Source: Perkinsus chesapeaki ATCC PRA-425
Taxonomy: Eukaryota; Protista; Perkinsozoa
NCBI GenBank assembly: GCA_013115145.1
Contig: JAAPAO010000012.1
Location: 79,563-143,562 of the forward strand
Direction of reading: 5' to 3'
DNA length: 64,000 nt
Shown: positions 1 to 64,000 of the stretch, in pieces
Position numbering within the stretch: the stretch's first letter is position 1
Layout of the letters: each line of letters starts with the position of its first letter
The notes under the pieces: model-generated
Database searches by the model: none
Seen by the model: the letters and a program-made list of their open reading frames with translations, nothing else
Told to the model about the DNA's origin: nothing
Program-made: the position numbers and the translations under genes

Positions 1-3
1 CAG

Positions 4-2545
4 GTGTTGGAACCGTCGACGGGCTTTTACCAGTTGCCGATAGCCACCCTTGATTTTGCCTCGCTGTACCCGAGTATCATGCAAGCTCACAACCTCTGCT
101 ACTCGACATTAGTGCAGCCATCAGTGGCACAGAGGGAGGGCCTCACTGAAGGGGAGGGAGGAGATGTAAGCTTTTAAAGTTTCATTGAACGAGCGTGCTC
201 TGATAGGTCACCCGTACGCCGTGTGGGCATTTATTTGTGAAGCAGAGCGTCCGAAAGGGTCTCCTACCTATGGTGCTGGAGGAGCTCCTCCAAGCTAGAA
301 AGAGAGCAAAGAAAGAGATGGCACAGGCAACAGACCCTTTGAAGAAAATGGTAGGAATACTAGTAACCAGTAAAGACTTCTTGTGCGTCATTCTTCAAGA
401 CTGACACATAGTAACACCTTTCTCAACACATTCGTCATGCGTAGTGCATCACAACGACATGCTGCCGCTCGGCAGTGCCGAGTCGGCACAGCGAGGAATG
501 CCAACCGGCAATAGTTAATAACCAGTCCATCTCAGAAGAGCGTTTCTCTTTCAGAGTTTATAGGGATTCTCGCCTCGAATATCTCGCGCAGGTCCTCAAT
601 GGCCGTCAGCTCGCATTGAAGGTGTCTGCCAACTCGGTCTACGGTTTCACTGGTGCCACAGTCGGTATGATGCCCTGCCTTGAGATAAGTAGCAGCGTTA
701 CTGCTTTTGGCCGCCAAATGATTGAACACACCAAAACACTGGTGGAACAGAAGCAAGTCGATTTCTGTCTCCCCCTATCGGCGACACTTCTCCTAAGGTA
801 CCGTGTGGAGAACGGCTACGCCCATGATGCTACGGTCATCTATGGTGATACCGATTCTGTTTTTGTTAAGTTCGGTTGTGATACTGTGGAGGAGGCAATG
901 AAGCTTGGACAGGAAGCTGCGGCATACGTTTCGACCACATTCATTGATCCCATTAAACTGGAATTCGAGAAGGTGGCTCGAGATTGGCATACTGAAAATG
1001 AGACTGTAGTTCTCTTTTGCGGCAGGTATACTTCCCGTACTTATTGATGAATAAGAAACGCTACGCTGGACTGTACTGGACGAACCCTGTGAAGGCCGAT
1101 AAGCTGGATGCTAAAGGTGGGCCACGCCTTCCGTTTTTACTAGCGGTCAATATATGCTTGATTCCACCGGTCTACAATTTTGTACGGAAGCACGAGGAGT
1201 TAAAGTGCTATTTTCGGCAGGTATTGAGACAGTACGGAGAGATAACTGTGAGCTCGTCAAAGTGGTGGTAGAGAACACTCTGAATATCATTCTTAAGGAG
1301 AACTCCCTTGACAGAGCCATTGCGTAAGACTGCGCTATTTTCATAATATCGAAGGGTCACTATACTCCGCGGAGCGAGGGACAATTCAATAGTAATGCTG
1401 CAGCATCACAATTGGTCATTTTCGTCAGTGCTTACCTTAGAATACTATCATTTATTATAGGCCAACATTTACCTAATCCTAAAAGCTATCTATGTACCCA
1501 TTCTCCCTTTCACTGTGTTCTCTTTTCCAGGTTCATTCGTAACACTCTCTCTGAGTTGCTGCAGAATAAAGTGGACATGTCCATGTTGGTTATCTCCAAA
1601 TCCTTAGCGAAGGGGATGGATGATGTACCTCGAGCTGCCCCACTTGGCTGGATTCTCGTCTCTCTGTAGGGGGCATACGCTGCAAAGCAAGCCCACGTTG
1701 AACTAGCAAAGCGAATGGCTCAGCGTGATCCCGGTAATGCCCCGGCCATTGGTGATCGAATACAGTAAGCCGCAGGGTCCCTGATGCCATCTGGGAGGTG
1801 CCCGCCAGGTACGTCATCATCAAAGCGCCAAAGGGAGTGGCTCAGTATGAGAAAGCCGAGGATCCTCTCTATGTGCGTGGCAGAACGAAGAGCGGTAGAA
1901 CGTGTGCTTTCATCAGGCTGTTGAAAATAATATTCCCGTGGACGGTCAGCACTACATCGATCACCAATTGAAGCAACCTTTAATGAGAATCTTTGAGAAC
2001 ATCTTACCGAATGCAGAGTCCGTACTCTTTTCTGGAGAGCATATGCGAAAAGTACGCAAATCAGCCAGGGGATCTCTGCAGTACGTTTGCAGGTGTTCCA
2101 ATCGGCGCCATCGGCTACTGGTGGCCTGTCCATGTTTCTCAAGAAAACGCATAAATGTCTGTCGTGTAAGGCAGTATTGAAGGACGGCCATGGCGGCGCG
2201 CTCTGTCAGCATTGCAAGAATGTAAAGGAAGGACAGGTGAGTTTGTTCGAGTTTGTCTTCCTTTTCGTGAAACGCTCGGACGGCTCCAGGTGGTTGTCGA
2301 GAAGACGAACGAGTTGCGCGCGCTGGAGGTTCAATTCGCGCGGTTATGGAGCGAATGCCAGAGGTGTCAAGGAAGCGTCGAACAGGATGTCATCTGCACA
2401 TCCCGAGACTGTCCAGTATTCTATCGGCGAGCTAAAGTAACATAATGATGCCATCGGCATGAAGCATATGCTACTGCAGGTGCGGAAAGACGCCGCCAGG
2501 GCCGCAGATGCTGTGAGCCGGCTAAGAGAGGCTGTTGACTGGTAG
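4..2545 (+). CDS. POLD1: DNA polymerase delta catalytic subunit (5'-truncated by window edge, multi-exon)
   Basis: Spliced translation gives B-family motifs [20 protein letters not shown] (region II), [16 protein letters not shown] (region III) and YGDTDS (region I). The C-terminal CysA (CLSC...CQHC) and CysB (CQRC...CTSRDC) motifs are those of pol delta. Stop TAG at 2543-2545. Confidence 0.97.
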
Positions 2546-3498
2546 AGGACGAGGCTTGGCGAATTTCCACCTAATTTCGTGCACTGCAAATGGAATAGTT
2601 TTGTTATCAATTCAATTCAGCCATAAGAGAGTTAGAGTTCAAGTAGCGACGGACTAAAATGTCATCCAAAAGGGAAGCTCAGGAGTGTCGAAAAGCTCAC
2701 ACCAGGCTACGCACCGGAGCCTTTCAGTCGCTGTAGTTCTTGGCGAGTGCATCACTACCGAGCCAGTCCCAGTGAGTTACACGCTGCAGCGGACCTTTAT
2801 AACTCGTAAACCGAGCCATGACGTCCTGATTCGGCAGTCAAGATTGTTGACTCAAGAATTACACAGGCTCCCAGTAACATCGCATCTAACTATGGCTCTA
2901 TGTTCATTTTATCACATGAGGTTGCACAACTTGTTCTGGCCTTGGCTAGACTACTCGTATACCGTTAGCTCCTAGAGATTCCCGAAGACGGAGCTTCATC
3001 GCCTATCCTTCCTCGAGATTCGATGCGAGCAGAGAAAGAGCAACATCATACAAAGTGCTCGCTAGCGAAGCTGAGGCACAACCTTCAGGCTGAACACTTC
3101 TGGGTGAACTATGCAGTAACACAGGAGGATGAGCAAACAAGCGCACTATGTGCCGCAATAGCCAGGTAAATATCAATCTTCCCGGTTGCACGGCCAGCAG
3201 AGGTGTCATAGAGCAAGCGCCGCGTTGCTCGGATGTCTTTCGCTCGGGCCACTGCCCGGCGCTCGACCTCTGGCGATTTATCCCTATTAACGCAAAACTA
3301 CATATACCTATGATCGAAAAGCTTATGCGGAAAAGGCTATCCACTTGGCAACTTCATGACAACGAAGGCCGTTATGCAGCGAGCGAGATCATAAGGCTCA
3401 ACAAAAGCCAAGATTGAGGTATTCTCAGCTGTTCGCGACGCTCTACACGAACGTCGCTACAGAACGAACGTGCTGGTGAACCTCGCAATCTTGTTGTA

Positions 3499-3702
3499 TT
3501 AGCAAGGGTTTGTGAACAGATCTCTTCCTTCGCAGCAAACGATATGACCAAGCACATCATGGTCACAGTGATTGCGACTTTGACCATGGTATCTAATACA
3601 CGTGCCATAATTCCGCCCGAAGGAGACACAATCCTTGGTGCAGCAATCATCGGCGCCCCATAGTGCGACGAAAGCGATGTTGCAGAGAATACGAAATATC
3701 AT
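3499..3702 (-). CDS. Small secreted cysteine-rich peptide (67 aa)
   Basis: ATG-started single-exon ORF with a hydrophobic N-terminus (MIFRILCNIAFVALWGA). The following ~50 aa carry 8 Cys in the pattern CC-x3-C-x9-C-x10-C-x9-CC-x9-C, ending at the last residue. No family recognised. Confidence 0.6.
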   Translation of the reverse strand: MIFRILCNIAFVALWGADDCCTKDCVSFGRNYGTCIRYHGQSRNHCDHDVLGHIVCCEGRDLFTNPC

Positions 3703-4688
3703 GTTGGGATGTAGACAGCGAAAGGAGAGCTGAAAGGGCGAGACAACGCCTAAAGCAATATGGATATCTCTCAGTGGGACTCGGCTACGGATTTTCTATC
3801 CCTTGGGTGATGTCTTGTTCCGATATTCGAAAACAACACATGGGGTGAACGAGCCAAAAACGTTGTACTAGGCGTAAATTATTTCCGTTGCTAACATCGA
3901 CTTTAGATGAGTAGTTCTTGTATGGGATGCGAACTAAATTCTTTGGGCTGCGATCACTTCGGCCCGCGTACCTTTTACCTATGCGTGCGTACGCAAACTG
4001 CGGCCAAAGTGAGATTCAAACGACCGACGCTGTTCTTTATATTAGTGAAGTCTAGCTTCTGCTTAAGCTAGACTTCCTATACCCCGTAGACTGCCGGAAA
4101 CAGAAGATCTGCTGAGTACTATGAGTAGTGTGGGCCCCCGCATACTATGCATGCGACGCATAGCGAGTGCCTATGCGCGTCATGTCACCCAACTTCCGAG
4201 TCGAAAATTTCGACGCCTCACCTTGCCCGACATTCGAAACCGACCACAGTGATCAACAGCTCCAGGTCAACGAGGAACTTGTTGGTGGTCTCAGAGTAGC
4301 ATCGAGTGTTGTCAGACGGACAGTGCGAGTTGCTCCCAGCATGTAGCAAGGAACCCTTTGTTGCATGAAGCGTGAAGCCCACAGCACGCCATTGGCACAC
4401 TGCCAATGGGCCAAATATATGTCGATTCGATGCTTTGGAAGCGTTTACCCACCCAATTATATGCTACGAAGCAGAATGTCCTATTATAAGATCTTGCTAC
4501 TTGTACTCGTAGTTTCTTGCTTTTAATGCTCTCGCTGGATAGTTTAGTTAACTCTTCCGCTGTCTCAGATCAATGTTTTCAACTCAATTTTACTAGTAAT
4601 AAATTACCATTCAAGTGGACATACAATACGACATCAATAACTCATACTCTACGCTAATCGTTAAAGTTGCTTTTTTGGTTTGAAAAAC

Positions 4689-7127
4689 ATGCCAGACCTT
4701 AGCAAAGATGACAACACAGCTATCCAGGACGTCTTGGGATCGGAAACCATCAGCTACTATGACTTGCTTGATCGTAGCTCTGGGTCACATCCAGAGAAGA
4801 GCGAGTGCAAGACAATCATTGGATTACTGCGCTCCAAGGCTCCGGAAAAGGTCGTCAGGTAGGAATATGCCGCTGACGCTATGGTCACTAACTTTGTCAT
4901 ATTCGTTAGGTTCCGAGGATTCCAGTGTTATCGATAAAGATGGAGCTAAATGCACCGTTGCAGGAACTCCTAAGCCCTACGAGCGTGCCACGCTCAGCGT
5001 GGTCCATTTTTGGTATTTGCAAAATTGAAAGCACACCAGCACTGAATATTTAGGAGACCGGTACGACTGACGATATCGCAAGCGCGGACGTTCACAAACA
5101 GCAGCCGTGACACCGAGCACCGTTGCGCCTCCGTATTAAACAAGAAACCTGAGAAGAATCTACACCATATGTTAATCGCCGTCTCTGCTGCGGTAGGCGG
5201 GCGGCTGGTCCAAAAGTTTTGGACCAAAACCAAGTTCGACGCCAAGCGCCGACTCTTAGCAGTGGCTGAGTCGAGGGGGGCTCGCTTAGTTCCTTTTGAG
5301 CTGAATATCTTAGCGGCCCTACTTTCTACGAAGTGGCCACCAGGGGGACTAATTCGATACTCAAGCACAACATTCTCACTGGGCCTTATGGCCCGCGCCT
5401 GAGATCGGAGGATCTCTCGGACGCAAGGAAGATAGCTTCTAGACTTTCAAAAAACCATGAGCGTTGGTTCTTGGCGAACGGAAAAACTTGTTCAGCGATC
5501 GACGCCGACAGAGAGGTAAGGTGCGGTGCTTGACGTAACATAGCTTGACTTGCCTTAGGCTGAATGTGGAGAAACATCTCCAGCGATTGACGCAGACAGA
5601 GAGGTAAAAAAAGAAACGTTCACTTCCCGACTCAACATAGCTCGATCTGCTCTAGGCTGAATGTGGGGAAACATCTACAGCGATTGCGAATGGAGTTGTA
5701 CGACCCCACCGTGAAGGTGAACCGGAAGCTCCTACATCCTACCCTAGCGTAAGCTCTCTCTCAAAAGTAGTCCATCTTCCCGTGATTCAAAACATCTTTA
5801 CAATGAAGAATGCCGAACAGCGCTCCGTCGAGAACGACCGTATCTCGCTGAACCTTCCGAAACTCCCTGCTCAACTGGCATTCCGAGTAACTCCGGCAAG
5901 CCCGCATCGAGTAGTCCTAGTACTGCATGCTGGCGGATCTGTAACTAACCACTTCGGTTCGTCACGGGGAACATGGTGGCCCAACTCGAGTCGGTGCATG
6001 TCGGTAAAAGCGACAATAGGGCCTGGTGAAAGTGCTCAAATTCATGGGAAGATCTCTGTGGCGCTGTTATTCTCGATCTACAGTAGCAAGACTGACGGCT
6101 GCGAGGGCTACTCAACCTCTTGCCGATGAAGAACACCAGGGACCATTCACCGATGAGAAGGTTCTGCCGTTTCACATCGCCTCACTGTCTCTAAATACTC
6201 GATCCAGACAGGTTGTAATGAGTCTAACACCAGAAACGTTGGAGGCCGATATGCTTCAAGGTAGCAACCAGAACAAGAGGTTCATGGCTGAGCAATCTTA
6301 TCTTAGATGGTTGCTCTGCTATGATGTTCTTACTGGTGAGCCGGTAATAATGTTATGCAATTAGCATTGGCAAGTAAAACTGTGATCTTTTCAGGTGGCG
6401 GTTATCACCTACACTTAGCAGGCGAGTCACCAACTTCTAAAGCTTACTGGTTATCTCTAGGCTGGCGCAACAGCCGCTGTGGACGAACCAGCAACAGTTG
6501 GCCGTTTAGGCAGCGGCTCAAAGTTGCTGTCTTCTCCCGACAGATTGGTCCCAATTGGGACCGACGATGTCTAACAACGGTAACAGAGGTACCGTACTAC
6601 GCAGAATTGAACGCTCTACTCATTATCGAGCAAATTCCGCGTACCCACTGTTGTTTTAGTGACGGCAACTGTCGCGGTGGACTGCCGCTTTGGCCCCTTG
6701 TGCGATGTACAAGGTTTGACCAACAAGCGCTTTGGCTGCGTCCCAACCGATGCGACCAAAAGTAGATGGCCGCTTCAGTTTGTCTTCAAGACACCAACTC
6801 TGAACCATTCCATAACTTTGCATCGGTTGACGGCTTTCATCGTTGAGTGGCATGTATGTATTATATACAGTTGGCCTTATATACTATATAAGGCCGCGTG
6901 TCAGAGCCATTGCAGACTACATCAATGGCAATGAAGGATGCTTGGCTACTGTTTGGGTCAAGCCCGGGAGGGCTGTCGCGATAGCGGACGAGCCGGGTGC
7001 CATCACAGAGTCAGAACTACATGTTTACTCTTCGCGGCCTTTCCATTCCAATCCTGATTTCCTTAATAAAGTCGTGGCTATGGGGTGGGAAATTTGCTTT
7101 CTTTGCGTAGCATATTCTTGTGTGTAG
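4689..7127 (+). pseudogene. Hypothetical multi-exon gene, possibly degenerate
   Basis: Several protein-like ORF segments (4680-4862, 5169-5402, 6026-6364, 6659-6934, 6843-7127) are separated by gtag/gtaa...ag intron-like stretches. I could not build one stop-free spliced frame, and no domain was recognised. Confidence 0.35.
5507..5686 (+). repeat. Tandem duplication of a short exon plus splice sites
   Basis: taggctgaatgtggagaaacatctccagcgattg (5556-5589) recurs as taggctgaatgtggggaaacatctacagcgattg (5653-5686). The donor context gacagagag|gtaa occurs at ~5507 and ~5596. Confidence 0.8.
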
Positions 7128-7163
7128 ATTGAAACGTGAAGTTAGAGACCCTAGCCTACTCAA

Positions 7164-8535
7164 TATCAGACTCTGATAATCAGAGCCATCCAAGGACCTC
7201 AGAGGCATAATATCAACCAACCGAGTACGTGAAACGGCCGCTCATCGAATGTATTATTATTTTTTAGATGCCACAGCACAGCAAGCTGTTAACCAAGGGA
7301 ATCAGGCCGCTTTTCCAGCACAACCAGTAGTATATCGTTATCGTTGAATACGTTCATACGTTCAATAGCTTGACTTGAAACTGCGCTCGTATTACTCTCG
7401 TCGCTATTGCCTCTTTTTAGGTCAATATCGCACCATTTGAGATCGAGACGAGACCGACAATCTCGAACTCCCGAGTCTCGATGCCGCTCTCTGTAGAAGC
7501 CACTTCAGCAAGCAACGTTAAATTTTCACTAAGAATAGCTGAGCTGGTTGAGTTTCGGGGCTCGAGAGTCTTGAGTCATGACCTGTACTACAGGTCCTGT
7601 AGGTCATGAGCTCGAACCCGGCAGTGAGATCACTCATTGAGAGGATTTTGTATGCATCCCTGGCACCGTGCCAGTGGCACGCAAACTATATCCGTTTGTG
7701 TCACACAAATTGTGTGCCAGGGATAACTGGGATAACTCTTCTCGTCGGTCTAACTGACGAAAAGCGTTTCGCAGAGCACGCGGAACTTCACTACGGAGGC
7801 GTGTACCGGCCAGCTCATAAGATACAGTAGTTATGGTGCAAAATTTGCACTGCACATTCCCCGGTATTCGTGTCCATGGACTCACTGTCCGTGGCATGGT
7901 GAGGAAATTATAATTTCATGGATGTAGTACAAATTTCACTCTAAATTTTAGTAAATTACAGTTTTAAACTGTAATTTGAAATACTGTTTGTTATTCTCAA
8001 TGTCCAAGTAGCTACTTTTGTTAGTTTTGTGTCCGAATTATTTTACTAGTTGGTGTCCTTATGCCGCATAAGCACACGCATAAGATATACGCTATTGGAC
8101 CGCGGCGGTCCTATAGCTCCCTTGAGGGTCAAGCTCTGCTTTAACTTATTTCTAACTTGAGTTACAACCGTGCGTCTCGGAGTCGCCCGAAGTCGGAATG
8201 GGGGGTGAAGCGGAGTCGCTCACTACTAGTCCCATAACCGGTTATCAAACCTTACAGCTTTCGATCGACACCAACAAATCTTAAATATCCATAATCATGT
8301 AAACTATGACGACTCGTCATTGACGAGCACAGTATTTACCATTGACCGACACAAGAGAAGTCGAGGTCAGCCAAGTTTGGTATTGACAGCATTGATGAGT
8401 GTTATCGAAACATCGGTCTTGGAGCCTCCTAAGCTACAGGCTAATGAAACTATAGCTCGGGATTCTCGAGCCGGGAGATTAAGTGATACTAGGTTACCTA
8501 GTCTTAACTTCTACCTAGTCTAGGTAGAAGTTAAG
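7164..8535. repeat. Dense cluster of short perfect palindromes, mostly with a 1-nt centre
   Basis: Examples read directly: 7164-7178, 7171-7185, 7580-7596, 7660-7674, 7695-7709, 7702-7716, 7836-7850, 7953-7977 (12-bp arms), 8058-8072, 8097-8111, 8488-8502 and 8503-8535 (16-bp arms cttaacttctacctag-t-ctaggtagaagttaag). Confidence 0.9.
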
Positions 8536-8660
8536 TTTTCAACCCTGAGTCAAACGAGAACACGGTACCTAAGAATAGGTCTGTTCTTCAGCTGAGAATA
8601 AGAATTGAAGTGGGAATAATATTGTATTATAAGCTAGGGCTGAGGACCATCAAACTATCA

Positions 8661-10377
8661 TCATGCACGGCACTGAGCTCCGGGGTGAGCTCTTGAGAGG
8701 TTCGGCCTTGTGGGTGGCATTACGAACATGTTACACGGGCCTAGAGGAGATGGTCACCAGATAGTACCATAAGAGCGAGTAGGTTTACCATCAGGCCTTT
8801 CATCTTGTTTCTTGACAATCCTCATATATCCTCCTTCACCCCACTCTTCTCCCCTCGAGTTCTTGAGAATCCAATAGCTACCATTAATAACCAATCACGT
8901 GAATTTTATCGCATCTCGCACTCACTCTTTTCCCACATTTGTGTCCGTTCCAAACCCGACTAATAACATAGCATGGTCTGGCTTGCCATTGCACTCCTGG
9001 CCTGCAAACGGATGTGATAGACATCCGTGACACGGGTAACACCGTGTTACCAACACGGATTCCGTGTAACCCCGCGTGGTAGCACGGGAGTACTCCGGGG
9101 TTGCCAATACGGCTTGTTTATCAGAATATATCTCCTTACTATCAAACACTCCTCCTTTGTACTGTTGGAATTCGTGGGAGTTCGCAGAGATGCCCACAGC
9201 CACTGGGCCTAGGCGAAGGTGTGTAGCTACGAGTTGGGAATCTCGAGGTGGGATTATCCGAATATCGAAGCTTCTCAGGTCTCCAACCTACGAAAAGCTC
9301 TGTACGACCAAACAGCATACCTCTTGCCTGTAAACATTGATCTCCCTTGTTCGAGACGATGGCGTTGTTGCATGTCCCATTTTGTTCGGTGTAGAGGTAG
9401 CTGCTTGCTGAGACGATCCCTTTGTCACTCACATATCTCATTGCGTACACGGGCTTGCCATCAATACAGCCGCTGAGATGCAAATATAACTATATATGTA
9501 TAAGTTGTACAGAGACTCAATCATTGAGACTCTCAATCAGAAGCGAAATGGTCTCATATCATCTTGTCACATGGTGGGGCTCACCGGTTTCCAAAATCGC
9601 CTGAGCAGTCTACAATTTGCTGCACTGAAAATTCGACAAGGCTTTTGGTTTTGATCTGGAAAGCTGATTCAAGCGCACCTGACAACTGTTGTCAGACAAC
9701 ATAAGTTCATCCATTCGAGTACCGCCCTCCTCAACATACCTACTGCCGCGAACGCATAGCAGCTACCGCAGTCGCCTTGATCCTTGGGTGGAGTTACGGC
9801 GCCATTATTTACCCAATTGATTGCTTCGCCTGCAAATGTGTGACCCCCGGCCCGGCTACTTATTGTCGGAGATTTCTGCGAGAGGCGGGTTGCCGAAGGC
9901 TCATTGCCTGAAACAATTATGCGTGGATACAAAGTATTTATTTCCAGCCGTACCTGGATCACCTAAACAGCTACGTATTTTGGCCATCTCTTGTGACTCA
10001 AGGAATGTCACCCTATTTGCTTCCATCTTGAATGAAGCTAAAACCGACCAGCTTTCCAATTATTGGAATCCAATACGCCGTTTATTCTATGATCGCATAC
10101 AATTGCCAGCATTGTGCTTTTCAATGAGCTTGTAGTTCTCGGTGAAGATTTTGAATCGATAATCGTTCTCCTTATAACCGTATCTTAGACCATACCTGAT
10201 ATTAATGCGGCACAAGTATTTATTAGAAAAGCGTGGCATCGTGATGAGGTAGCTTCACCAACGCGCCTACTTTTTCTTAAGGCGACCATAAACATCTCCT
10301 ATTTCCTTCAGAGAGGCTCCAGTTGACAGGGTAATCAGCAACACCAAATGGAAGAAGATAGCTTGACAGCGTAGCAT
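8661..10377 (-). CDS. Papain-family (C1A) cysteine protease, cathepsin L-like preproenzyme, multi-exon
   Basis: Signal peptide MLRCQAIFFHLVLLITLSTG and an ERFNIN-like prodomain (ENDYRFKIFTENYKLIEKHN). Catalytic motifs are KDQGDCGSCYAF (Gln/Cys), DHAMLLVGFG (His) and YWILKNSRGEEWGEGGY (Asn). Stop at 8661. Confidence 0.92.
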
Positions 10378-10831
10378 GATTCACTAGAGAACAATGCCAG
10401 CACTTATACATTCTATATCACTTAAATGCCAAAACAGGATGGCCGGCTCGGCCCCCACGAGAGCTCTAAGGTGTACCGCTAAGAGTTCAGGAAAGATGGT
10501 CTTCAACTCGCAGCATCTGGCGCGACATGACATCCATCAATGATAGACCATCATGTCACGAAATATATTATTTGTCATGTCACGTGTAACTCAAACGGTG
10601 TGAACCACAACGCATTACCGCTTTTTCCTCGTAGCACCAGTACCGGGCGAGTAGGTTCTTATTCTAAACTCGAGCAATGCTCGGCCTTAGAGCCGGATAC
10701 TTAGATAACTTGCCAGCCTAAGGCGGGTGTAATGGCCCAAAGCAGAGCTTGTAAGATATGATTTAGAGTTGCTGTTCAGAGTTGCTGCAGTCCGCGGTGC
10801 TTGTAGCGGCTACAACGTGAGCTACAATGTA

Positions 10832-10964
10832 GCTCAGTATGAGAAAGTCAAGGATTCTCTCTATGTGCGTAGAAGAGTAAAGGTCGGTAGAACGCGTGCT
10901 TCCATCAGGCCGTTGAAAATAATATTCCCGTGGACGGCCAGCACTACATCGATCACCAATTGAA
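10832..10964 (+). pseudogene. Dispersed ~133-bp copy of an internal piece of the pol delta gene, intron included
   Basis: Near-identical to 1840-1972 (gctcagtatgagaaag...gatcaccaattgaa), including the short intron gtgcgt...catcag. No other pol delta sequence flanks it. Confidence 0.9.
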
Positions 10965-12339
10965 ACGCTTTTCCCTATTGGGAGCAGCAGTCCCTCGGAA
11001 GAACTCCGCGCTATGTAGAATGCGGGGTCGTTCCTATTTAGATAAGCAACTTGTCACAATCCATTCGCCTGAGCTAAGGGCGGGTATGCTGAGGCTCAGC
11101 TGCTCATGAGCAGCTGAGCTGACAGCACTTCGATCTGGTCAGCGGCGGCCGCTGAGAGAGGGCCGTCACAGAGCGACGCAGTCGATGAAACGGTGAATCG
11201 ACTCGGGTTTCTCGGTGAAGTCTGCTGCTGCTGATGAAACACAACGCGCTCCAGCGATTGTGGTGTTCCCCGCGTCTCCTGCGTCGATTAGTATCTGTAA
11301 CAAAGATACCACGGCCAGCAAGGACCCGATTAACGAGAATTGTAGCGAAATTGTTGTTCTTCTCAGAACCAGCTCGCTGCAGTCTGATTTTCTCGCACTT
11401 GAACTTCCGCGGTGTTGCGAGTGGACCACTTCATTCTGCGGGACGATTTCAATTCAGGCTTCCTACGCAGTCGATCGAGGAGACCTGTCCCACACAGACT
11501 AGTGATTAGTTACTAATCTGGCCCTATGGTGTGCAGATGTCCGACCACGTCGATCACTTCTTCAATGAAGAATCCTCATCACCTAATTATGAGGGGTAGA
11601 TGTGATATAGAGCCAAATTGACTCAGCCAATGTAAATTAAGAGGACGCGGAAATGTTATTGTATAGCATCTCGGCTTAAACCCTCTGCAACTACGTGATT
11701 ATTAGTTTGAGTAACGATATGTATCCCCCAGCATTGTATGGTGGCTTATGGCTACCGATAAGTTATATGTTGTCATAACACGACGCATTTCAGTCGTGAA
11801 AGATTTGCCAGCGTTGATGGACCTCCAGCGACGAGTTATAAACATACCCTTCTAAGCAATTCGTAAGCTGACAACTGGAGGGTTCGACTTTACGTCATCA
11901 GTACTCACGTCGTTATGTTTTCTGTATTTGATGAGCCAGGCTTGGTTGTTCACGATTAATGACTAGTGCGGTGACGCTAATCCACAGTACGACTAAGCGC
12001 ACTCAGTGACAAACTAAAAACTGGGGTACCGAATGTTAATAGAGAGTATATTCCTGTTGAGGCCCGTGCCGATAAAATGAAAACGTTCGATCATCAACAA
12101 CATCTTATCAGTCTGACTTCCATCAGTTGAAAGCGCAATCGGGGAGCTTGCGACTCTTCCGCTCTCATAGTTCGGGTGATGTCGCAAGGATGGACTTGGA
12201 GCCAGTATCTGTGGAGGTGCAAACTCCAGTGGAAGTATTCCACTTATGCCATTGGGAACTCGAGCATTCATATGGGACTGCAAGCTTCTCCTATGTGGTT
12301 GCAGTGGAGAATTCCCGTAAGAAACCAATAAGCAATTCA

Positions 12340-14397
12340 CTAGTGGAGAGGTTGCTCTCCGAAATGGCATCGTGAGTTTAATAGTACAGACTTAAGCCTA
12401 CACTGGTCTTTCCTTCTTATAGACATAGCACTGTTGACAAAACGCTTGATCAAATCCATAGCCGCATCAGGCTGATTCATGGGAACCATATGGCCAGCAT
12501 TTCTACATGCAAAGTAACATGCGAGTGAGGCTATACGTAGAAGTCTGGTTACCGAACAGAGTAATGACTCAATGGGCCAAAGTGGCATTCGTATCCATAG
12601 ACAGCTTCCTCTGGACTGGTTGGCTGAGAATATACAAACCGTGGGGCATCGATATGAGACGACAGACAAGAAGGCTGAGCTGTGTTTTGCATGACTCTTC
12701 TAGCCCGAAAGTGTTATGACTCGGTGTTTGACCAACAATAGAGGATAGAACCACGCGCTAAACTTACGTCGGGTCCCCTCCATATATTCCGCTTGCTGGC
12801 AAGGAAACCGGCCATGCCATCCCACACCATTTCCGGAATCCAGGCGTTTGTCCTGGAATTCAAGCGATGTGACTTATGATGTGAGAAACGCTCACGCTAG
12901 CAAGCCGTCCCTCGCATCTTTGTCTCCTTGGTAAAGCATGACCGGCACTTTAGCGTTGAGCAGAGGGGGTAAGCAGTGCATCATGGGCTTCATTATGTCT
13001 TCAAGCAAATGCTTGTGAACGGCATCATCAGTTCTGATAAACGTACCATCTGAAGCCTAGCGCGAAGTAAGAGCTACCCGAAATGTCTGTCCGCAGGGAC
13101 ATGGAAGGTTTCTTTAACCTCAGGGAGATTTAAAAAATGCTGTAGCCTCTCGTCGAGAAAACTGTAAGTACCAGTGACTCTGAGGAGGACAGCTAGTAAT
13201 ACAGTATTCCCTAGCAGCGCCAGGGATCACCGAACGTCGTAGATGTTAACTCCACCGCTCTCTTCCAGCATCATTTTCTCAAGGCTCTCGCGAAGCGTCA
13301 AGGCTTCCAACCATCTGAGGAAGCGAATGGCCATTGCAGATGACTCACAAAAATAACTTTTCTTCTAGGGCAAGCTTCTTCGCCTTCTGTCCCAGTTCAC
13401 GGGCTTCATCAATCTTATCGGGGCCGATAAGGCCGAAATAGTACGCAACATCGGCTTTGGCGGCAACTTGGAAAGCTAAAACAATACAGAGGTCGTTTGT
13501 CACCCGATATCGCGATGGGATATCGTTCAGTATTCCACACCGAGGACCATGTGAAATGGACTGACCTGGAAAGGTGAGTCCATTTCCTATGGCAACTCCA
13601 CTGAGGGGTGTCTTATCGATAGGGTTCTCTATTAGGTACTTCCCTAAGGCCGGGATATAGTGGCCTGCGTATGATTCACCAACGATGAACCTATTGGAAG
13701 ATAATCGGAAGAAAGTGCCAATGGGCGGCTTACAATGGATGCTCTTTTAGCTCAGGTTTGACTTCCCTATAGAATGTCGTTAGGAACGTATACAACTGCT
13801 CTGTCACATCATGTTCGGTACTATTGGCATAACCTTCCGGATAGTCAGTGTAACTGTAACCAGTCCCCACTGGGCTATCAACAAACACCATGTGGTAAGA
13901 ATTAGCCCAGGTTACATTTCTACGAACCTATGTTGATCAAACGAACGATGCTGTTGGCAAGATCACAGACTTACGAGGGTTGTGTTGTTGATCAAGTTGA
14001 GAGGGCCCATCTCAAAGAAATTGCCGAAGAACCCAGGGGCACCGGGCCCGCCTTGGAGCCACAGAATCAAGGGTGTATTTTTGTCGTCTTTAAGCAAATC
14101 ATCAAGCGGGGGAAAGTACCTTGTTAAAAAATACGACCAGTACTTCTACCTACAATGTTAATGATTGGCACTACCAATAGAACATGGAAGAATTGAAATT
14201 GGTATCAACTGCTACCATTCCAGCATCACTTTGTATTTCTGTAACCTTAAAAGGTTGAGGTGGTCGAATAGCGCGTTCACAAGAGGCGCCATTCTTACCC
14301 GAGTATCTTTTGATATTTTATTCAGGTCTACCGGTAGGCTAAAGACGCCAAGAGTATAAAGGATAGCCAGCCACGTAGTGCAGAGCCTTGCTGGCAT
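12340..14397 (-). CDS. Serine carboxypeptidase (S10 family, CPVL-like), copy 1, multi-exon
   Basis: Signal peptide MPARLCTTWLAILYTLGVFS. Motifs LILWLQGGPG, FVDSPVGTGYSY, catalytic-Ser GESYAGHYIP and catalytic-His NAGHMVPMNQP. The 3' end is uncertain. Confidence 0.93.
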
Positions 14398-14999
14398 TGC
14401 AAGTCTTCTACACTGACAAAGGCGCTCCCACCATTGTGGATCATTGTCTGCGGTGCTCAATGTCAGTGCAAGGTGTTTTCTTATGCACGTTCCGATTGTA
14501 GAAAAGTAGATGAGGGTTCGCCGTGCTCGTGGGGCAAATGTTAACAGAGCCTATGCCTCCTGGTATGCACGTGCTAGGTCGACGGGGCCCTCATCCCCTG
14601 CCACTGAATCCAAGTAAGCTTGTCACTGTAGGATGGTCTATACGGCTAATCGATTTTATAACTCCACCAAACTCAAGTTGAAGATACAACACATATAAGA
14701 AGAGAGCGCAGTTACGACGCTAGTAGCGGCCTCCTCTCTGGCAATCCTCGGGATTAAGCCATGCAACTGTTGCGGTATATTGTAGTGCAACATGTGGAAT
14801 CCCGCCATGCAAGGTGGTAGACGCAGTGCGTCTGACGCACGCATGCGCAGAGACTAAGACGGCGCGGACTCTGCACCTAGGAGGAAGGCTCCCAAGAGCC
14901 GCAAGCTATGCACGGTTCCATGGGTTCGGCAAAACTCGCGACTTATGGGCAGAGGCAACCATTCCATTGGACTTACGTCTGCCTCTTTGAAACGAATTA

Positions 15000-15420
15000 G
15001 TGCTTGAAGCAAATGGAATGGAGCAGCGCACAGAGCAACACAAGATCTGTCTTACATGTCGATATGATCAAGTCTGCCCGTATGTCAGCAAGCGAACCGC
15101 ATACATCCGCAGTTCCTCAGTTGGATGCTTAGTCCAGTGTTCTATTATGCCACCCTCGCGGACACTGTATTGGCTTACACGGTATGACTGTTACAATCGC
15201 GTGATACTTTTGCGAGCTTGCAAAAACTTGTCCCAGGGATCCGTGACGCGCAGCACGATTATAATGAGTGACGAATGCAGGTCATATACAGACTCAGCTC
15301 AAAATGTGAACCAAACGAATCTGTGAGTCGAAGAGAGCAACCGACAATGAGTCTCCGCTGATGGGCATTGAATCCTGTCCCGAATTATCTCAAGCGCCGA
15401 GAGGCGTCAATGTGGATGGT
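15000..15420 (+). mobile_element. Possible decayed Merlin/IS1595 (ISXO2-like) DDE transposase relic
   Basis: ORF 15000-15326 contains GSVTRSTIIMSDECRSY, similar to the family motif GSTIxSDxWRAY, then NVNQT (compare TVNHS). Downstream out-of-frame pieces read GIESC and YLKRREASMW. Eye match only; no TIRs found. Confidence 0.35.
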
Positions 15421-17165
15421 AAATGTTACAAAAGCCAAACGGATGAGCGGCGCTGATTGAGACTTGACGGTTGGGCTTCCGATGGATTCGGTGGGGTCAC
15501 TACCAAACCAACGAGTAGTAGTAGAAGCAAATTTGCCTTAGCAACTTCTGCCTGAACTCCTTGCTCAACCAACACAACGAAAACTCACGGAGCGAAAAGT
15601 GAACTACAAAATAGATTGTCCTCCCGGATTACAAGCGCAGACATCTGGAGTAGATATCCGACAGGAGATCAACCTCGTGGCCGACTCGCCACTGGCCACA
15701 AAGGCCATAACATGAGAACTGATAGCAGCAGGTAGGCAACGGATACTTAGTAGGCTTCGTCTATCTTCAGGGGGAGCCCCGCTGGAGATAATTAGGTAGA
15801 GAATGTCTACTAGACACCCAAGACATCAAAGCAAGGGTCTCTGCGCAAATCTTTACCCTCACAGCAGGAGAAGAATTGATCAGGCAAGCAGCGATTCCCA
15901 AGCCCGGTGACTTCACCACAAACTCCGGGTCCGGTCATGCCCAGCCAACAGTCATTGAAACAGCAATCGTCTACTGCCCATGAAACAATGAAGAGAATGT
16001 TGCAGAGTGCCAGACGTAGTATTTAGTGCGCGGGAGCTGATGAGTGAAAGGTCTACAAAAATACGAATGATGCCAGAGAGGCACTCTATAAAGGTGCACT
16101 ATAACTCGATGCAGTGTGACACAATAAGACAAGGCTTAATTGTGAGTACGCTTAGTGCCCTGAGAGTCGATCAGCCCTGCGCGATGAGTCGATCACGCAA
16201 TCGATAGCTGATTGTAGGTATTTGATACGCAAGTGCAAGCACTAACGCACAGAGGTCGGCAACAGTAATAGACAAGACCATACAGTAGGAATAGCGCACA
16301 GCCTGTGCGGCACAGGTTGCGCGTCGAACAAGTAGGAAGACGCTTCTCCTCCTCACGAGCAGTGAAGCGGCACTTTCTGAAATGAATCTGTGCGATCTTT
16401 TGAGACGTGACGCCCCTGTTGCCACGTATCGCGGGATACGCGTACGTGTTCGGTGTTCCCTCTCGGCTCTATCCTTTCGAAAGCGGGGAGGAGTGGACTC
16501 AAGTCCTCCTTTAGCAGGCCTCCGTCGCCAAACCTCCGGAAAGGATCCCATGAGAACCAGAAGCACGCATGACAAATATGAGGTTTGGTCGGTGTTTTAA
16601 GTAGCATGCTTATTCGAAGCCTCTTTGACAGGTATCAGATAATACAAGTAAACTACGCATCTCTTCGAGTACTTTGTAGATCTTGCCTTCCTCAACTGAT
16701 GTTTTCTACCGATGTAACACTGCCAATCCTTGAAAATGGCTTAGCGAAAAAACAGTTTCCCATATAACAGCGACTGGCGAATTTCGTACCACCAGGGTGT
16801 GAGTGTAACATCAGTCCACCTCCGGCAGCAAGATTTACTGGGAGCTGTTCGCACTATTAACTACTATGGCAGCCTTTGGAGGACGGAATCAGTTTCGTGA
16901 GTCTTACTGAACTCCACCGAACTTTCCGAGCACTTTGAAATGAATGACTAAAACACCACAAAGATAAGAAGAAACTAACGTGTGGTGAGGGCACGAGTCC
17001 ATAAAATAAAAATTGTTTTATAGCCATAACATTTAATATAACGAAACCTCGGCCAGTCGAAGCCCACCACTTGGTCGGAGAGTATCACTCAATCTCTGGT
17101 GACGCAGCGAGAAAAGACTTAGATTTAGTATCTGAAGGAAACGGTGTCCACCATAGAGAGTTAGG

Positions 17166-19398
17166 CTACACTAGCCAAACAAGAAGCCCGTGTCCAATGC
17201 CACTAGACACGGGCTTCTTGACCATGAAACTGAGATAAATCATGTTCCTTGAGGATGATGTACGGTACGCGAAGTTGTACAAGGTGAGGACGGTATGCTT
17301 ACCGTTTATTGAGATAGCATTTATAATGAAACGTTTGATCAAATCCATAGCCGCATCAGGCTGATCCATGGGAACCATATGGCCGGCATTTCTACATGCA
17401 AAATAACATGCGAGTGAGGCTATAGAAGTGTGGTTACCGAACAGAGTAATGACTTAATGGGCCATAGTGGCGTTCGTATCCATAGACAGCTTCCTGTGGA
17501 CTGGTAGGCTGAGGAAGAGATCACAATACGGCTATGCAGTGCATAGTATGCACTAAAGGCAAACAAACCAGATATCTAGCTATGAGCTGTATAACTCGAT
17601 CGGCATTCTATAGCGCATCATAGTGGTCATTGTGTAGTGAATTGCCAGATGTTGGTACTACTGCCGGCAACAGCAACACCTGGCGAGCCCCCGCCTGTGA
17701 GTTCTGTAAAAACGACTATGCAACCGACTTACGTCTCGTCCTCTCCATATATTGCGTTCACTGGAAAGGTAGTCGGATATACCGTCCCATGGCAGCTCGG
17801 GGATCCACGCTTCAACTCTAAAATATGGTAGGCACTTAATACGGGACGAACCGAGCTGAGCTGCGTTACGATATTAATCCGTCCTTCGCATCCTTGTCGC
17901 CCTCAAAGAGCATCACAGGCACTTCAGCGTTCAGCAATGGCGGTAAGCAATGTACCATTGGCATCATTATATCCTCCAGCAAATGTGCCTCGACGGCCTC
18001 ATCGGTTCTAAAAGACGAAAACCTTGAGATACGAAATATGCAGTAAGCGCTACTTGAAGGACCGATCAACGGGAACATGCAGGGTGGCCTTAACCTCCGG
18101 AAGATTCAGGAAGTGCTCAAGCCTTTCGTCTTGCCAGCCATAATCGTCTGTGGTACTGAAGAGAGCGGCAGTTTCCGTCGCAGCTACTAAAGCGTGCCGC
18201 AGCTGACCGAATATCGTAAAGATTAATTCCACCACTCTCCTCCTGCATCAACTTCTCGAGGCTCTTACGTGCCTCCAGAGCTTCCAGCCATCTGGCAAAA
18301 CAGGGTCAGCACTGGCTTACAGGAGGAACTCACCTTCCCTCTAGTGCGAGTTTCTTCCCTTTTTGTCCTAGTTCACGGGCTTCATCAATTCTATCGGGAC
18401 CGATAAGGCCGAAATAGTACGCAACATCGGCTTTGGCGGCAACTTGGAAAGCTGAAAACAAAACAGAAATTCTGTATTCTGTAACAGAATTCAGCCTCGT
18501 CGTGAGAAGGAAGTAGCCGACGACAAAATGGCAGGGAAATACGGCATTTAAGTGAAGTGAACTAACCTGGAAAGGTGAGCCCATCTCCTATAGCAACTCC
18601 ACTGAGTGGTATCTTATCGATAGGGTTCTCTATTAGGTACTTCCCCAAGGCCGGGATATAGTGGCCTGCGTATGATTCACCAACGATGAACCTATCGAAG
18701 GTAATCGGAAAAGGAATGCCAATGGGCGGCTTACAATGGATGCTCTTTTAGCTCAGGTTTGACTTCCCTATAGAATGTCGTTAGGAACGTATACAACTGC
18801 TCTGTGACATCATGTTCGGTATTATTGGCATAACCTTCCGGATAGTCAGTGTAACTGTAACCAGTCCCCACTGGGCTATCAACAAACACCATGTGGTAAG
18901 AATTAGCCCAGGTTACATTTCTACGAACCTATGTTGATCAGCTCATGAACGATGCTATCGACATCAGAAGCTCACCAAAGTAGTTCGGTTAATCAAGTTG
19001 AGCGGGCCAAGCTCGAAGAAGTTGCCGATGAATCCTGACGAACCAGGTCCTCCCTGGATCCACAGAATCAAGGGTGTGTTCACATCATTTTGAAGTGAAT
19101 CGTCTAGAGGGGGGAAATACCTTGAAAAGGAATGGACGAATTAAACACTCGGAGGTTAATGCAAGTTCTACCAGTAGAACATAGAAGAGTTCAAGTTGGA
19201 ATTGATGCTCACCATCCCGGCATCGCTTCGGATTTCTGTGACCTGAGGACTAAGGGTATTCCGATGGAAGAATATACGAGCCAGTCTCGGAATAGCTACC
19301 TTGGGGTCTGTCGAGATCTTAGAGAGGTCCACAGGTAAACCGGAGACACTCCATAGATATATCAGCGCCACGAGAGTGGTAGGGAGAGCCGCGGGCAT
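17166..19398 (-). CDS. Serine carboxypeptidase (S10 family, CPVL-like), copy 2, multi-exon
   Basis: Paralogue of 12340-14397 with matching intron positions. Signal peptide MPAALPTTLVALIYLWSVSG; motifs GESYAGHYIP, LFEGDKDAKDG and AGHMVPMDQP. The 3' end is uncertain. Confidence 0.93.
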
Positions 19399-19955
19399 AT
19401 GGAAATTATTTTGCACTAGGTGACGTATAATCATGATACAACGGTTGGTCTTGTTTCGCTAGGGGAAGCTAGTACAACGGAATTGGCGAGACCCGTCAAG
19501 TAGCATGTGTAGGCGTATTACAGTTGATACGTACAATACTCATAACGTGAGATATAACTTATGTATATGAATATGAAAGAATTCACAGATTCTGAAACCG
19601 TAAGGTAGACAGTACATCGCTGAGCGGTCGTGAAAAAGGGACATCTTCGCGACACAACTGTGAGTAACTTCTAGCAGACTAACTCCTTGACAGGCTTTGA
19701 TGGAGATTCTCGAAGAGTGTACATTTGAGCCTGCACGAGTCGAACGACGGGTTCGCTTGGTGCTTCAGCTTTATAAGCGAAGCATGCACAGTTACTCTCT
19801 GTACATGAACGTTGCCCGGGTTTTCGTCGTACCATCGCCGACCTCGTTATGCTTTCACAATGTGCTCTGACTGTTCTAACACAACCACTGGTAATACCGG
19901 CGATGAAACATATACGACAAAGTGAAGTATATCGCCTAACATACAGTTATCATCC

Positions 19956-23135
<3,180 letters not shown>

Positions 23136-53952: not shown

Positions 53953-54142
53953 ATGCTTCGCGGAATCACCCGTGCCGTGCTGGTAAGATGCTCAGGAGCT
54001 CTATTCGGATGCCCTCTATCTGGGCTGCAATCCACCATCCCAAAAATGGAAACAATCTGACACCTCTAGCCACCGAAGCCCTGAACTCAACAACCAATCA
54101 CTAAGTGTAACGAAACGACGTTGTGGCTGGTAAAGTGCCACT

Positions 54143-63200: not shown

Positions 63201-64000
63201 CTCCTTGTTCTTTTTTGTTCACCCGCTTCAGCGCTTCAGGAGGCTGTGACCTCGGACCGCTGCACGTATTTCGCAGTACAGTATCAATTAACTAGTGTGT
63301 GATGAGTATTCGTGAGTAGAGTAAAATGCTGAGTCAATTGGTTTGTGTTGAGTTGATTAGTGTCGAATGGCAGTTAGAGCTTTTTGAGTGATGTGTCGAG
63401 TGATCTATCATTGATAGACTACCAAGTGTGTACTAAGGCTAGACGATATTACGAAAAACTTGGCGGCGGAAGGTTGCTGCCAGTGTTGTAATATCTGCCG
63501 GCCATGAGCCCACTCAACTGCTGTTGAGTAGTCAATGCAGTTATTAAACTTGTAAGCAGTTGCAAACCTGCTGGAGTTCAGTGCAGATCTCATAAATTCA
63601 TTTCTTCGCCAACATACGTAGGGAAACTCATGCATATAATGCAAGTTACGTATGTATTGTTGTACCCCTGACAACTGGTCTCTGCATCGGAATGAGCAGA
63701 GAACAACTTGCTGTCCATCACTGTAGGACACAACACTGATGAACTGGAAAATCGATAGCTTTGACAGAAAATACGCCCTATGAGGGCAAAATAATAAGGA
63801 TGGACTCTGGCTCGAAATGTACCTCCAAGCACTTCGTGCTTTTCGAAACAAAAATATGCGCGACTACGAAGGCAACAAAACTAAAATTTTATTCGCTTTA
63901 CGGTACTGTTCGATCCAGACCTCCCCATCCAAGTTGGACTAGGAAGGTTGGAGTCTTAGGTTGAACTATCCAACCTAACAAACCCACAGTGGCGTGTGAC

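What the first reader, a model, noticed from the sequence alone, without database searches (positions are those of the whole stretch)
7164..8535. Chained, single-base-centred micro-palindromes: a possible fold-back/hairpin repair signature
Seen: this non-coding stretch is packed with perfect inverted repeats whose arms are separated by exactly one base (arms 7-16 bp; e.g. 7580-7596, 7953-7977, 8503-8535). Several are chained X-n-X'-n-X, so the second arm of one is the first arm of the next (7164-7178/7171-7185; 7695-7709/7702-7716). The arm sequences differ from one another, so this is not one repeat family or one protein-binding motif. A given 7-bp-arm, 1-nt-centre palindrome is expected about once per 4^7 (~16 kb) positions at uniform composition, and this 1.4 kb holds at least a dozen. 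Established: opening of DNA hairpins (hAT-type excision footprints, V(D)J P-nucleotides) and template switching or polymerase-theta snap-back synthesis all create local inverted duplications. Inference: a recurrent hairpin or strand-switch repair process, not selection for RNA stems, is building non-coding DNA here, since a 1-nt loop cannot close a normal hairpin.
Basis: partly seen in the sequence, partly recalled or inferred. Interest (0 to 1): 0.75.

Follow-up and report, generated by a model that had tools for sequence, protein, structure and literature searches.

The report
Transposon excision scars fill spacer
This stretch between two genes of the clam parasite Perkinsus chesapeaki is packed with small mirror-image scars, most likely left each time a hAT-type jumping gene cut itself out; the mechanism is known, but the scars here are unusually long, uniform and dense.

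Summary
The region 7164-8535 holds 16 perfect palindromes with 7-16 bp arms and exactly one central base. Shuffled sequence gives 0.1. No other spacer length is enriched.

Most of them belong to one 22-bp architecture: an 8-bp site followed by an inverted 6-mer and then the site again, with the two junction bases complemented. This is what a hAT-type transposon should leave on excision: an 8-bp target duplication, flank hairpins with one unpaired tip base, hairpins opened 6-19 nt from the tip, and rejoining through the two complementary inverted target copies. The net gain is 14 bp.

Tests done here:
- Only an 8-bp geometry occurs (33 perfect chains in 263 kb, none for 7, 9-12 bp).
- Separated twin palindromes rebuild identical 8-mers.
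- Copies of a small repeat give filled versus empty sites.
- The inferred targets show the hAT preference nTnnnnAn.
- Intact hAT transposase ORFs exist in the genome.

Not shown: no resident element with inverted ends and an 8-bp duplication was found, and raw reads and sister-species DNA could not be checked.

The scan had already reported the same scars on other pieces of this genome. The mechanism is known. The form (long P-nucleotides, stereotyped 22-mer) and the density (about 15% of this spacer) look undescribed.

The parts
7164..7185 (.). Canonical 22-bp scar; inferred 8-bp target TATCAGAG
   Evidence: Two perfect 7-1-7 palindromes with centres 7171 and 7178
7561..7582 (.). Older, decayed 22-bp scar (2 of 14 pairs broken), abutting the next one; nested events
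   Evidence: chance expectation for 2 mismatches is about 0.2 per window (own calculation)
7581..7602 (.). Canonical 22-bp scar; target ACCTGTAG; lies inside a longer, older inverted repeat
7660..7681 (.). Canonical 22-bp scar; target CTGGCACG
7695..7716 (.). Canonical 22-bp scar; target TTTGTGTG
7836..7857 (.). 22-bp scar with one later substitution; target GTGCAAAT
   Evidence: 1 mismatch
7953..7977 (.). One-sided scar: 12-1-12 palindrome, i.e. a long P-nucleotide tract from one flank with the partner target copy lost
8020..8257 (+). Old copy of a roughly 220-bp MITE-like repeat (7 copies in the genome); used as the reference for filled versus empty sites
   Evidence: alignment A4
8053..8077 (.). 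One-sided scar inside the repeat. The central base is the complement of the base found in the other copies. The inverted tract is 12 nt, and about 12 nt of the right flank are deleted
8091..8117 (.). One-sided scar inside the repeat, apparently joined to the right flank through a 5-nt microhomology
   Evidence: the junction reading is inference
8172..8219 (.). Complex scar inside the repeat: a 7-1-7 palindrome with one mismatch at target GCGACTCC (central base complemented relative to the other copies), followed by an inverted copy of the right flank. About 30 bp extra compared with the other copies
   Evidence: only partly resolved
8306..8327 (.). Canonical 22-bp scar; target ATGACGAG
8488..8535 (.). 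Twin scar that was not annealed: a left 7-1-7 and a right 16-1-16 palindrome abut, and both rebuild the same target ACTAGGTA (8 of 8)
468..489 (.). Canonical scar outside the finding, at the edge of a DNA polymerase delta exon. Further perfect ones lie at 4981-5002, 5209-5230, 9680-9701, 10054-10075, 14819-14840, 16295-16316 and 17532-17553
10801..10836 (.). Twin scar (targets agree at 7 of 8) at the left junction of a duplicated polymerase delta fragment. Another twin lies at about 18463-18490

Best explanation
These are excision footprints of hAT-type cut-and-paste transposons, laid down repeatedly in a spacer that tolerates them.

Proposed steps:
1. Insertion duplicates an 8-bp target t1..t8.
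2. On excision the transposase nicks one base into each flank and seals each flank into a hairpin. The single unpaired tip base is the complement of t8 on the left and of t1 on the right.
3. The host opens each hairpin 6-19 nt from the tip, not 1-4 nt as in plants or vertebrates. Each end then carries a long self-complementary 3' tail.
4. The two tails contain complementary inverted copies of the target. They anneal over up to 8 nt, flaps are trimmed and gaps are filled.

The product is always t1 W t8' W' t1' W t8, where W is t2-t7. That is 22 bp where 8 bp stood, a gain of 14 bp. If annealing fails, the ends are joined directly and leave twin long palindromes. If one end is resected, a single palindrome remains.

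Shown here: the geometry, the complemented tip bases, insertion into previously empty sites, the target preference, and the presence of hAT transposases in the genome.

Inferred: the identity of the hairpin-opening nuclease (Mre11-type end clipping is my guess), the annealing step, and which hAT family did it.
For: (1) Chains occur only with centres 7 bp apart. There are 33 perfect chains in 263 kb, 0 at distances 6 and 8-11, and no even-centred chains with arms of 6-9.
(2) Of 74 neighbouring palindrome pairs at other distances, 7 rebuild an identical 8-mer from both sides and 2 agree at 7 of 8. The rest follow chance. The inverted tracts in these pairs are 6-19 nt long.
(3) Filled versus empty sites in a 7-copy repeat. 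The C2870 copy has exactly 14 bp extra, turning the single GTGCAAAT of the other copies into a perfect 22-mer (L023:1608-1629). The C278 copy has 38 bp extra, made of a complemented t8, 13 nt of inverted left flank, 2 filler nt, 15 nt of inverted right flank and a complemented t1, at target CTCTCACT. The window copy shows complemented tip bases at two sites.
(4) Target preference nTnnnRAn. Canonical events have T at position 2 in 14 of 33 and A at position 7 in 16 of 33 (combined p = 3e-4). Single palindromes independently give p = 0.01 and 4e-4. This matches the published hAT preference nTnnnnAn, which I cite from my own knowledge.
(5) The hAT dimerisation domain has 11 hits in the genome, with open frames of 515-534 aa on C18, C616, C767 and C449. 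The C-terminus matches the Hermes transposase.
(6) Scars are absent from the coding-dense 45 kb of the window, as expected for 14-bp insertions under selection.
[quoted passage not shown] Mre11-Sae2 nicks hairpin-capped ends: PMC6315862.
Against: No resident element with inverted ends and an 8-bp duplication was found in about 300 kb, and no hAT transposase lies on this contig. The transposase matches rest on the C-terminal domain only, and the catalytic residues were not checked. Mutator-like transposases are more numerous in this genome and can also make 8-bp duplications and flank hairpins. Raw reads, other isolates and sister species could not be examined. The repair-gene survey was inconclusive. 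Some scars (8172-8219 and the nest at 7561-7612) are not fully explained by a single event.
Confidence: 0.84

Rival explanations
1. The scars come from another hairpin-forming superfamily, most plausibly Mutator-like elements, not from hAT.
For: The MULE transposase domain has at least 25 hits with long open frames in this genome. MULEs make 8-10 bp duplications and flank hairpins (PMC5499845).
Against: The duplication is strictly 8 bp, with 0 chains for 9-12 bp, whereas Muta1 gives 8 or 9. The Muta1 hairpin was reported as 43+43 nt, which is even, while every scar here is odd-centred and no even-centred chains with arms of 6-9 exist. More than 90% of Muta1 excisions are precise. The nTnnnnAn preference is a hAT trait.
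Confidence: 0.07
2. Transposon-independent fold-back synthesis or template switching at breaks (polymerase snap-back) makes the inverted copies.
For: Such processes do create local inverted duplications, and no transposon is present at any scar.
Against: They predict variable spacers and arm lengths and no direct repeat. Here the spacer is always 1, the direct repeat is always 8 bp, the tip bases are complemented, and the sites show a transposase-like target preference.
Confidence: 0.04
3. The palindromes are an assembly, amplification or polishing artefact.
For: Raw reads could not be inspected, and the assembly is fragmented (3544 contigs).
Against: An artefact would not avoid coding DNA. 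It would not show a target-base preference, would not exist in decayed versions with 1-3 substitutions, and would not appear as a clean 14-bp difference between old, diverged repeat copies.
Confidence: 0.02
4. The palindromes are selected functional elements, such as protein-binding sites, terminators or RNA stems.
For: They lie in a convergent 3' spacer, where termination signals would be expected.
Against: The arm sequences are all different. A 1-nt loop cannot close a stem. There is no Rfam match. The 22-bp three-arm layout and the filled versus empty sites point to a mutational origin.
Confidence: 0.02

Closest known systems
Ac/Ds, Tam3 and Hermes (hAT) excision footprints
   Same: An 8-bp target duplication is kept on both sides. 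The bases next to the element are replaced by their complements because the flank hairpin has one unpaired tip base. Rejoining uses microhomology (PMC1978519).
   Different: Published plant footprints carry 1-3 palindromic nucleotides and are heterogeneous. Here the inverted tracts are 6-19 nt, and most events converge on one deterministic 22-bp product. The density is far higher: about 11 events in 1.4 kb.
P-nucleotides in V(D)J coding joints
   Same: Palindromic additions arise from off-centre opening of a transposase-made flank hairpin.
   Different: V(D)J P-tracts are usually 1-4 nt (Artemis opening, my own knowledge). There is no 8-bp duplication, and the events are somatic, not germline genomic history.
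Mre11-Sae2 processing of hairpin-capped breaks in yeast
   Same: A host nuclease nicks internally to a hairpin-capped end (PMC6315862). That would give the long tails needed here.
   Different: The link to Perkinsus is inference only. Mre11 is present, but nothing ties it to these scars.
Mutator-like element excision (Muta1)
   Same: Flank hairpins and 8-9 bp duplications (PMC5499845).
   Different: Excision is mostly precise, the hairpin is reported as even-length, and the duplication length is variable.

Membership tests
hAT-superfamily excision footprint | 8-bp target-site duplication retained around the scar | tested here: met
   Chains occur only at centre distance 7 (33 against 0 at distances 6 and 8-11). 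Twin palindromes rebuild identical 8-mers. The empty sites hold the 8-mer once.
hAT-superfamily excision footprint | The base adjoining the element is replaced by its complement (hairpin with a one-base offset) | tested here: met
   The central bases are the complements of the bases in the empty-site copies at C2870, C278 and window 8065 and 8179. All palindromes are odd-centred.
hAT-superfamily excision footprint | Target preference nTnnnnAn | tested here: met
   Canonical events: T at position 2 in 14 of 33 and A at position 7 in 16 of 33, p = 3e-4. Replicated in single palindromes. The preference is moderate, not absolute.
hAT-superfamily excision footprint | hAT transposase encoded in the same genome | tested here: met
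   PF05699 has 11 hits. ORFs of 515-534 aa exist. The C-terminus matches Hermes. The catalytic triad was not examined.
hAT-superfamily excision footprint | Resident elements with short inverted ends flanked by 8-bp duplications | tested here: inconclusive
   None in about 300 kb. The transposase loci were cut too short to reach the element ends, and no more DNA could be fetched.
hAT-superfamily excision footprint | Short (1-3 nt), heterogeneous palindromic additions, as in plants | tested here: not met
   Tracts are 6-19 nt and mostly resolve to one 22-bp form. This is the feature that makes it a variant.
Mutator-like element footprint | Duplication of 8-10 bp, typically 9, variable within a family | tested here: not met
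   0 chains for 9-12 bp.
Transib / RAG-type footprint | 5-bp target duplication | tested here: not met
   Chains at centre distance 4 number 12 against 4 expected, with no clear signal. All twin pairs that rebuild a target do so with an 8-bp one.
Template-switch or snap-back inverted duplication | Variable spacer and arm length, no flanking direct repeat | tested here: not met
   Only a spacer of 1 is enriched, and there is a fixed 8-bp direct repeat.

The most novel reading that the evidence does not exclude
Perkinsus resolves transposase-made hairpins by a route unlike the Artemis-type tip opening of plants and vertebrates. It nicks 6-19 nt from the tip and then anneals the two inverted target copies, so every hAT visit adds exactly 14 bp. 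Transposon traffic, not transposon residency, would then act as a ratchet that builds a tenth or more of some spacers and introns. It would also leave a self-dating, sequence-independent record of every insertion and excision, and would keep seeding new palindromes that could later be recruited as signals.
Probability: 0.4. Interest if true: 0.65.

Novelty: new variant of a known kind. Interest (0 to 1): 0.55.

Why it matters
Excision footprints are usually a few bases long and invisible in genome sequence, so the history of cut-and-paste transposition is lost once the element leaves. Here each event leaves a scar that can be recognised from its form alone, without knowing the element. This has several consequences:
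- Past insertions can be counted: roughly one scar per 2.6 kb in the 263 kb sampled, and one per about 125 bp in this spacer.
- Their target choice can be read off.
- They can be dated by decay of the arms.
- Their contribution to non-coding DNA can be measured: about 200 of 1372 bp here, by my own tally.

The scars also point to an unusual way of opening DNA hairpins in an alveolate parasite whose DNA repair is almost unstudied. Annotators of Perkinsus genomes should not read these palindromes as regulatory sites.

Tried and rejected
- Sister-species and independent-assembly comparison.
- More genome sampling.
- Haplotigs of window 1-19500. None in the assembly.
- Tandem serine carboxypeptidase paralogues as filled/empty references. 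The exons align but the introns do not.
- Scan for inverted ends plus direct repeats of 6-10 bp. Nothing for 7-10 bp.
- Rfam and tRNA scans. No hits.
- Repair-gene survey. One weak Ku hit, several family-A polymerases, Mre11 present, no DNA-PKcs domain, but that search found nothing anywhere. This is too weak to support or exclude any pathway.
- Assigning the 220-bp repeat at 8020-8257 to hAT. Its flanks suggest about a 5-bp duplication, so it was not used as evidence for hAT.
- My first idea of a 15-mer k-mer artefact. Dropped once the 22-bp layout, the target preference and the filled versus empty sites were seen.

Full report
WHAT IS THERE. The window is Perkinsus chesapeaki contig C222:79563-143562. 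A 690-aa ORF in it is 100% identical to an NCBI protein of that species, on a contig of the same length. The finding lies between the 3' ends of two convergent genes. One is an unnamed gene on the plus strand that ends near 7127. The other is a papain-like cysteine protease on the minus strand, whose last exon ends near 8700. There is no Rfam or tRNA match.

- Perfect palindromes with arms of at least 7 bp and exactly one central base number 16 in 7164-8535. Other spacer lengths give 0-3, and dinucleotide shuffles give 0.10.
- The excess covers window 1-19000, which is intron-rich and about 47% GC: 43 against 1.0 expected. It vanishes in the coding-dense remainder: 5 against 3.2.
- Arm length peaks sharply at 7.
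- Chained pairs always have centres 7 bp apart. This defines a 22-bp unit, n1 W n2 W' n1' W n2', with W a 6-mer. Thirteen units are perfect in the window, and others carry 1-3 broken pairs.

WHAT THE ARCHITECTURE MEANS. Reading the unit as t1 W t8' W' t1' W t8 gives an 8-bp site, an inverted copy of its core, and the site again. The two junction bases are the complements of t8 and t1.

This is what follows from published hAT chemistry. [quoted passage not shown] A flank hairpin made this way has one unpaired tip base, which explains the single central base. If both hairpins are opened far enough from the tip, the two 3' tails contain complementary inverted copies of the target. Annealing and fill-in then give the 22-mer whatever the exact opening points were. 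This derivation is mine. Earlier notes of this scan had already proposed hAT scars, and that turned me away from an artefact reading.

TESTS OF THE MODEL.
1. Size specificity. In 263 kb (the window plus 200 kb from three contigs) perfect chains occur only at centre distance 7. There are 33 of them, none at distances 6 and 8-11, and no even-centred chains with arms of 6-9.
2. Twin test. For pairs of odd palindromes within 90 bp that are not 7 apart, I rebuilt the target from the left and from the right. Seven of 74 pairs agree at 8 of 8 positions and two at 7 of 8, where about 0.001 perfect agreements are expected. The other pairs scatter around 2 of 8. One perfect twin is 8488-8535 in the finding. 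The inverted tracts in twins are 6-19 nt, so the hairpins were opened far from the tip.
3. Filled versus empty sites. The spacer contains an old copy (8020-8257) of a roughly 220-bp repeat that has six other copies in the genome.
   - One copy (L023:1608-1629) has exactly 14 extra bases, which turn a single 8-mer into a perfect 22-mer.
   - One copy (L002, about 1525-1584) has 38 extra bases that decompose into a complemented t8, an inverted left flank, two filler bases, an inverted right flank and a complemented t1.
   - One copy (L025:1540-1561) holds another perfect 22-mer.
   - In the window copy the central bases at 8065 and 8179 are the complements of the bases in the other copies. Here one flank was partly deleted, which explains the single palindromes.
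4. Target preference. The inferred targets favour T at position 2 and A at position 7, with a purine at position 6. This holds in canonical events (p = 3e-4) and independently in single palindromes (p = 0.01 and 4e-4). It matches the nTnnnnAn preference known for Ac/Hermes-type hAT elements (my own knowledge).
5. The enzyme. The genome has at least 11 hAT dimerisation-domain hits and several open frames of 515-534 aa. These are about 32% identical to each other, and one of them matches the Hermes transposase at its C-terminus.

WHAT IS NOT SHOWN.
- No resident element with inverted ends and an 8-bp duplication was found in about 300 kb, and none of the transposase hits lies on this contig.
- Mutator-like transposases are more numerous, and they can also form flank hairpins with 8-9 bp duplications. 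I rank them second for four reasons: the duplication here is strictly 8 bp, the hairpins are odd-centred, Muta1 excision is mostly precise, and the target logo is hAT-like.
- The nuclease that opens the hairpins is unknown. Mre11-type internal nicking of hairpin-capped ends (PMC6315862) would fit the long tracts, and Mre11 is present, but the repair-gene survey was otherwise uninformative.

SIZE OF THE EFFECT. The finding holds about 11 events: five perfect and two decayed 22-mers, one twin, and three single or complex scars. By my tally they add about 200 of the 1372 bp, and 265 bp lie inside such palindromes. Some are nested (7561-7612), so the same spot was hit repeatedly. In the 263-kb sample there are 155 odd palindromes where about 21 are expected, and they are strongly clustered.

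NOVELTY. The mechanism is textbook. Long P-nucleotide tracts resolved into one stereotyped 22-bp product, at this density in a wild genome, are not described in the papers I could search. The scan itself has already reported the same scars on several other pieces of this genome. This report adds the size-specificity test, the twin test, the target logo, the repeat-family empty sites and the comparison with Mutator-like elements.

Noticed in passing
window 8020-8257; L020-L025: A roughly 220-bp MITE-like repeat with imperfect inverted ends of about 11 bp and 7 copies in the genome. The flanks of three copies suggest a duplication of about 5 bp, so it is probably not a hAT derivative. Two copies (C278, C3377) share further sequence to the right.
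   Followed up: partly
window 12380-13900 and 17270-18900: Tandem paralogues of a serine carboxypeptidase gene (minus strand). The exons are 88-93% identical but the introns cannot be aligned. This suggests fast intron turnover or exon-limited gene conversion.
   Followed up: partly
window 10829-10964 vs 1837-1972: A 136-bp copy (89% identical) of a DNA polymerase delta exon-intron piece sits 9 kb downstream of the gene. Its left junction coincides with a twin scar (10801-10836), so the fragment may have been captured during break repair.
   Followed up: partly
window 19000-21000: Sharp change in character. Window 1-19 kb is about 47% GC, intron-rich and full of scars. From 20 kb on it is 52-60% GC, has long uninterrupted ORFs and holds no scars above chance.
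   Followed up: no
window 54131-54145 and 63404-63425: Isolated scars in the gene-dense part. One is a 7-1-7 palindrome that overlaps the stop codon end of the UTP25 ORF. The other is a 22-mer with one mismatch.
   Followed up: no
G000, many contigs: Mutator-like transposase domains are abundant: at least 25 hits, with open frames up to 1368 aa. No even-centred or 9-bp footprints were seen, so their excision, if it occurs, seems to be repaired differently.
   Followed up: partly
L027, L035, L041, L043, L044: Each of these 10-kb stretches holds one run of 97-99 N (gap or withheld DNA). L042 and L043 share repeated AT-rich segments.
   Followed up: no
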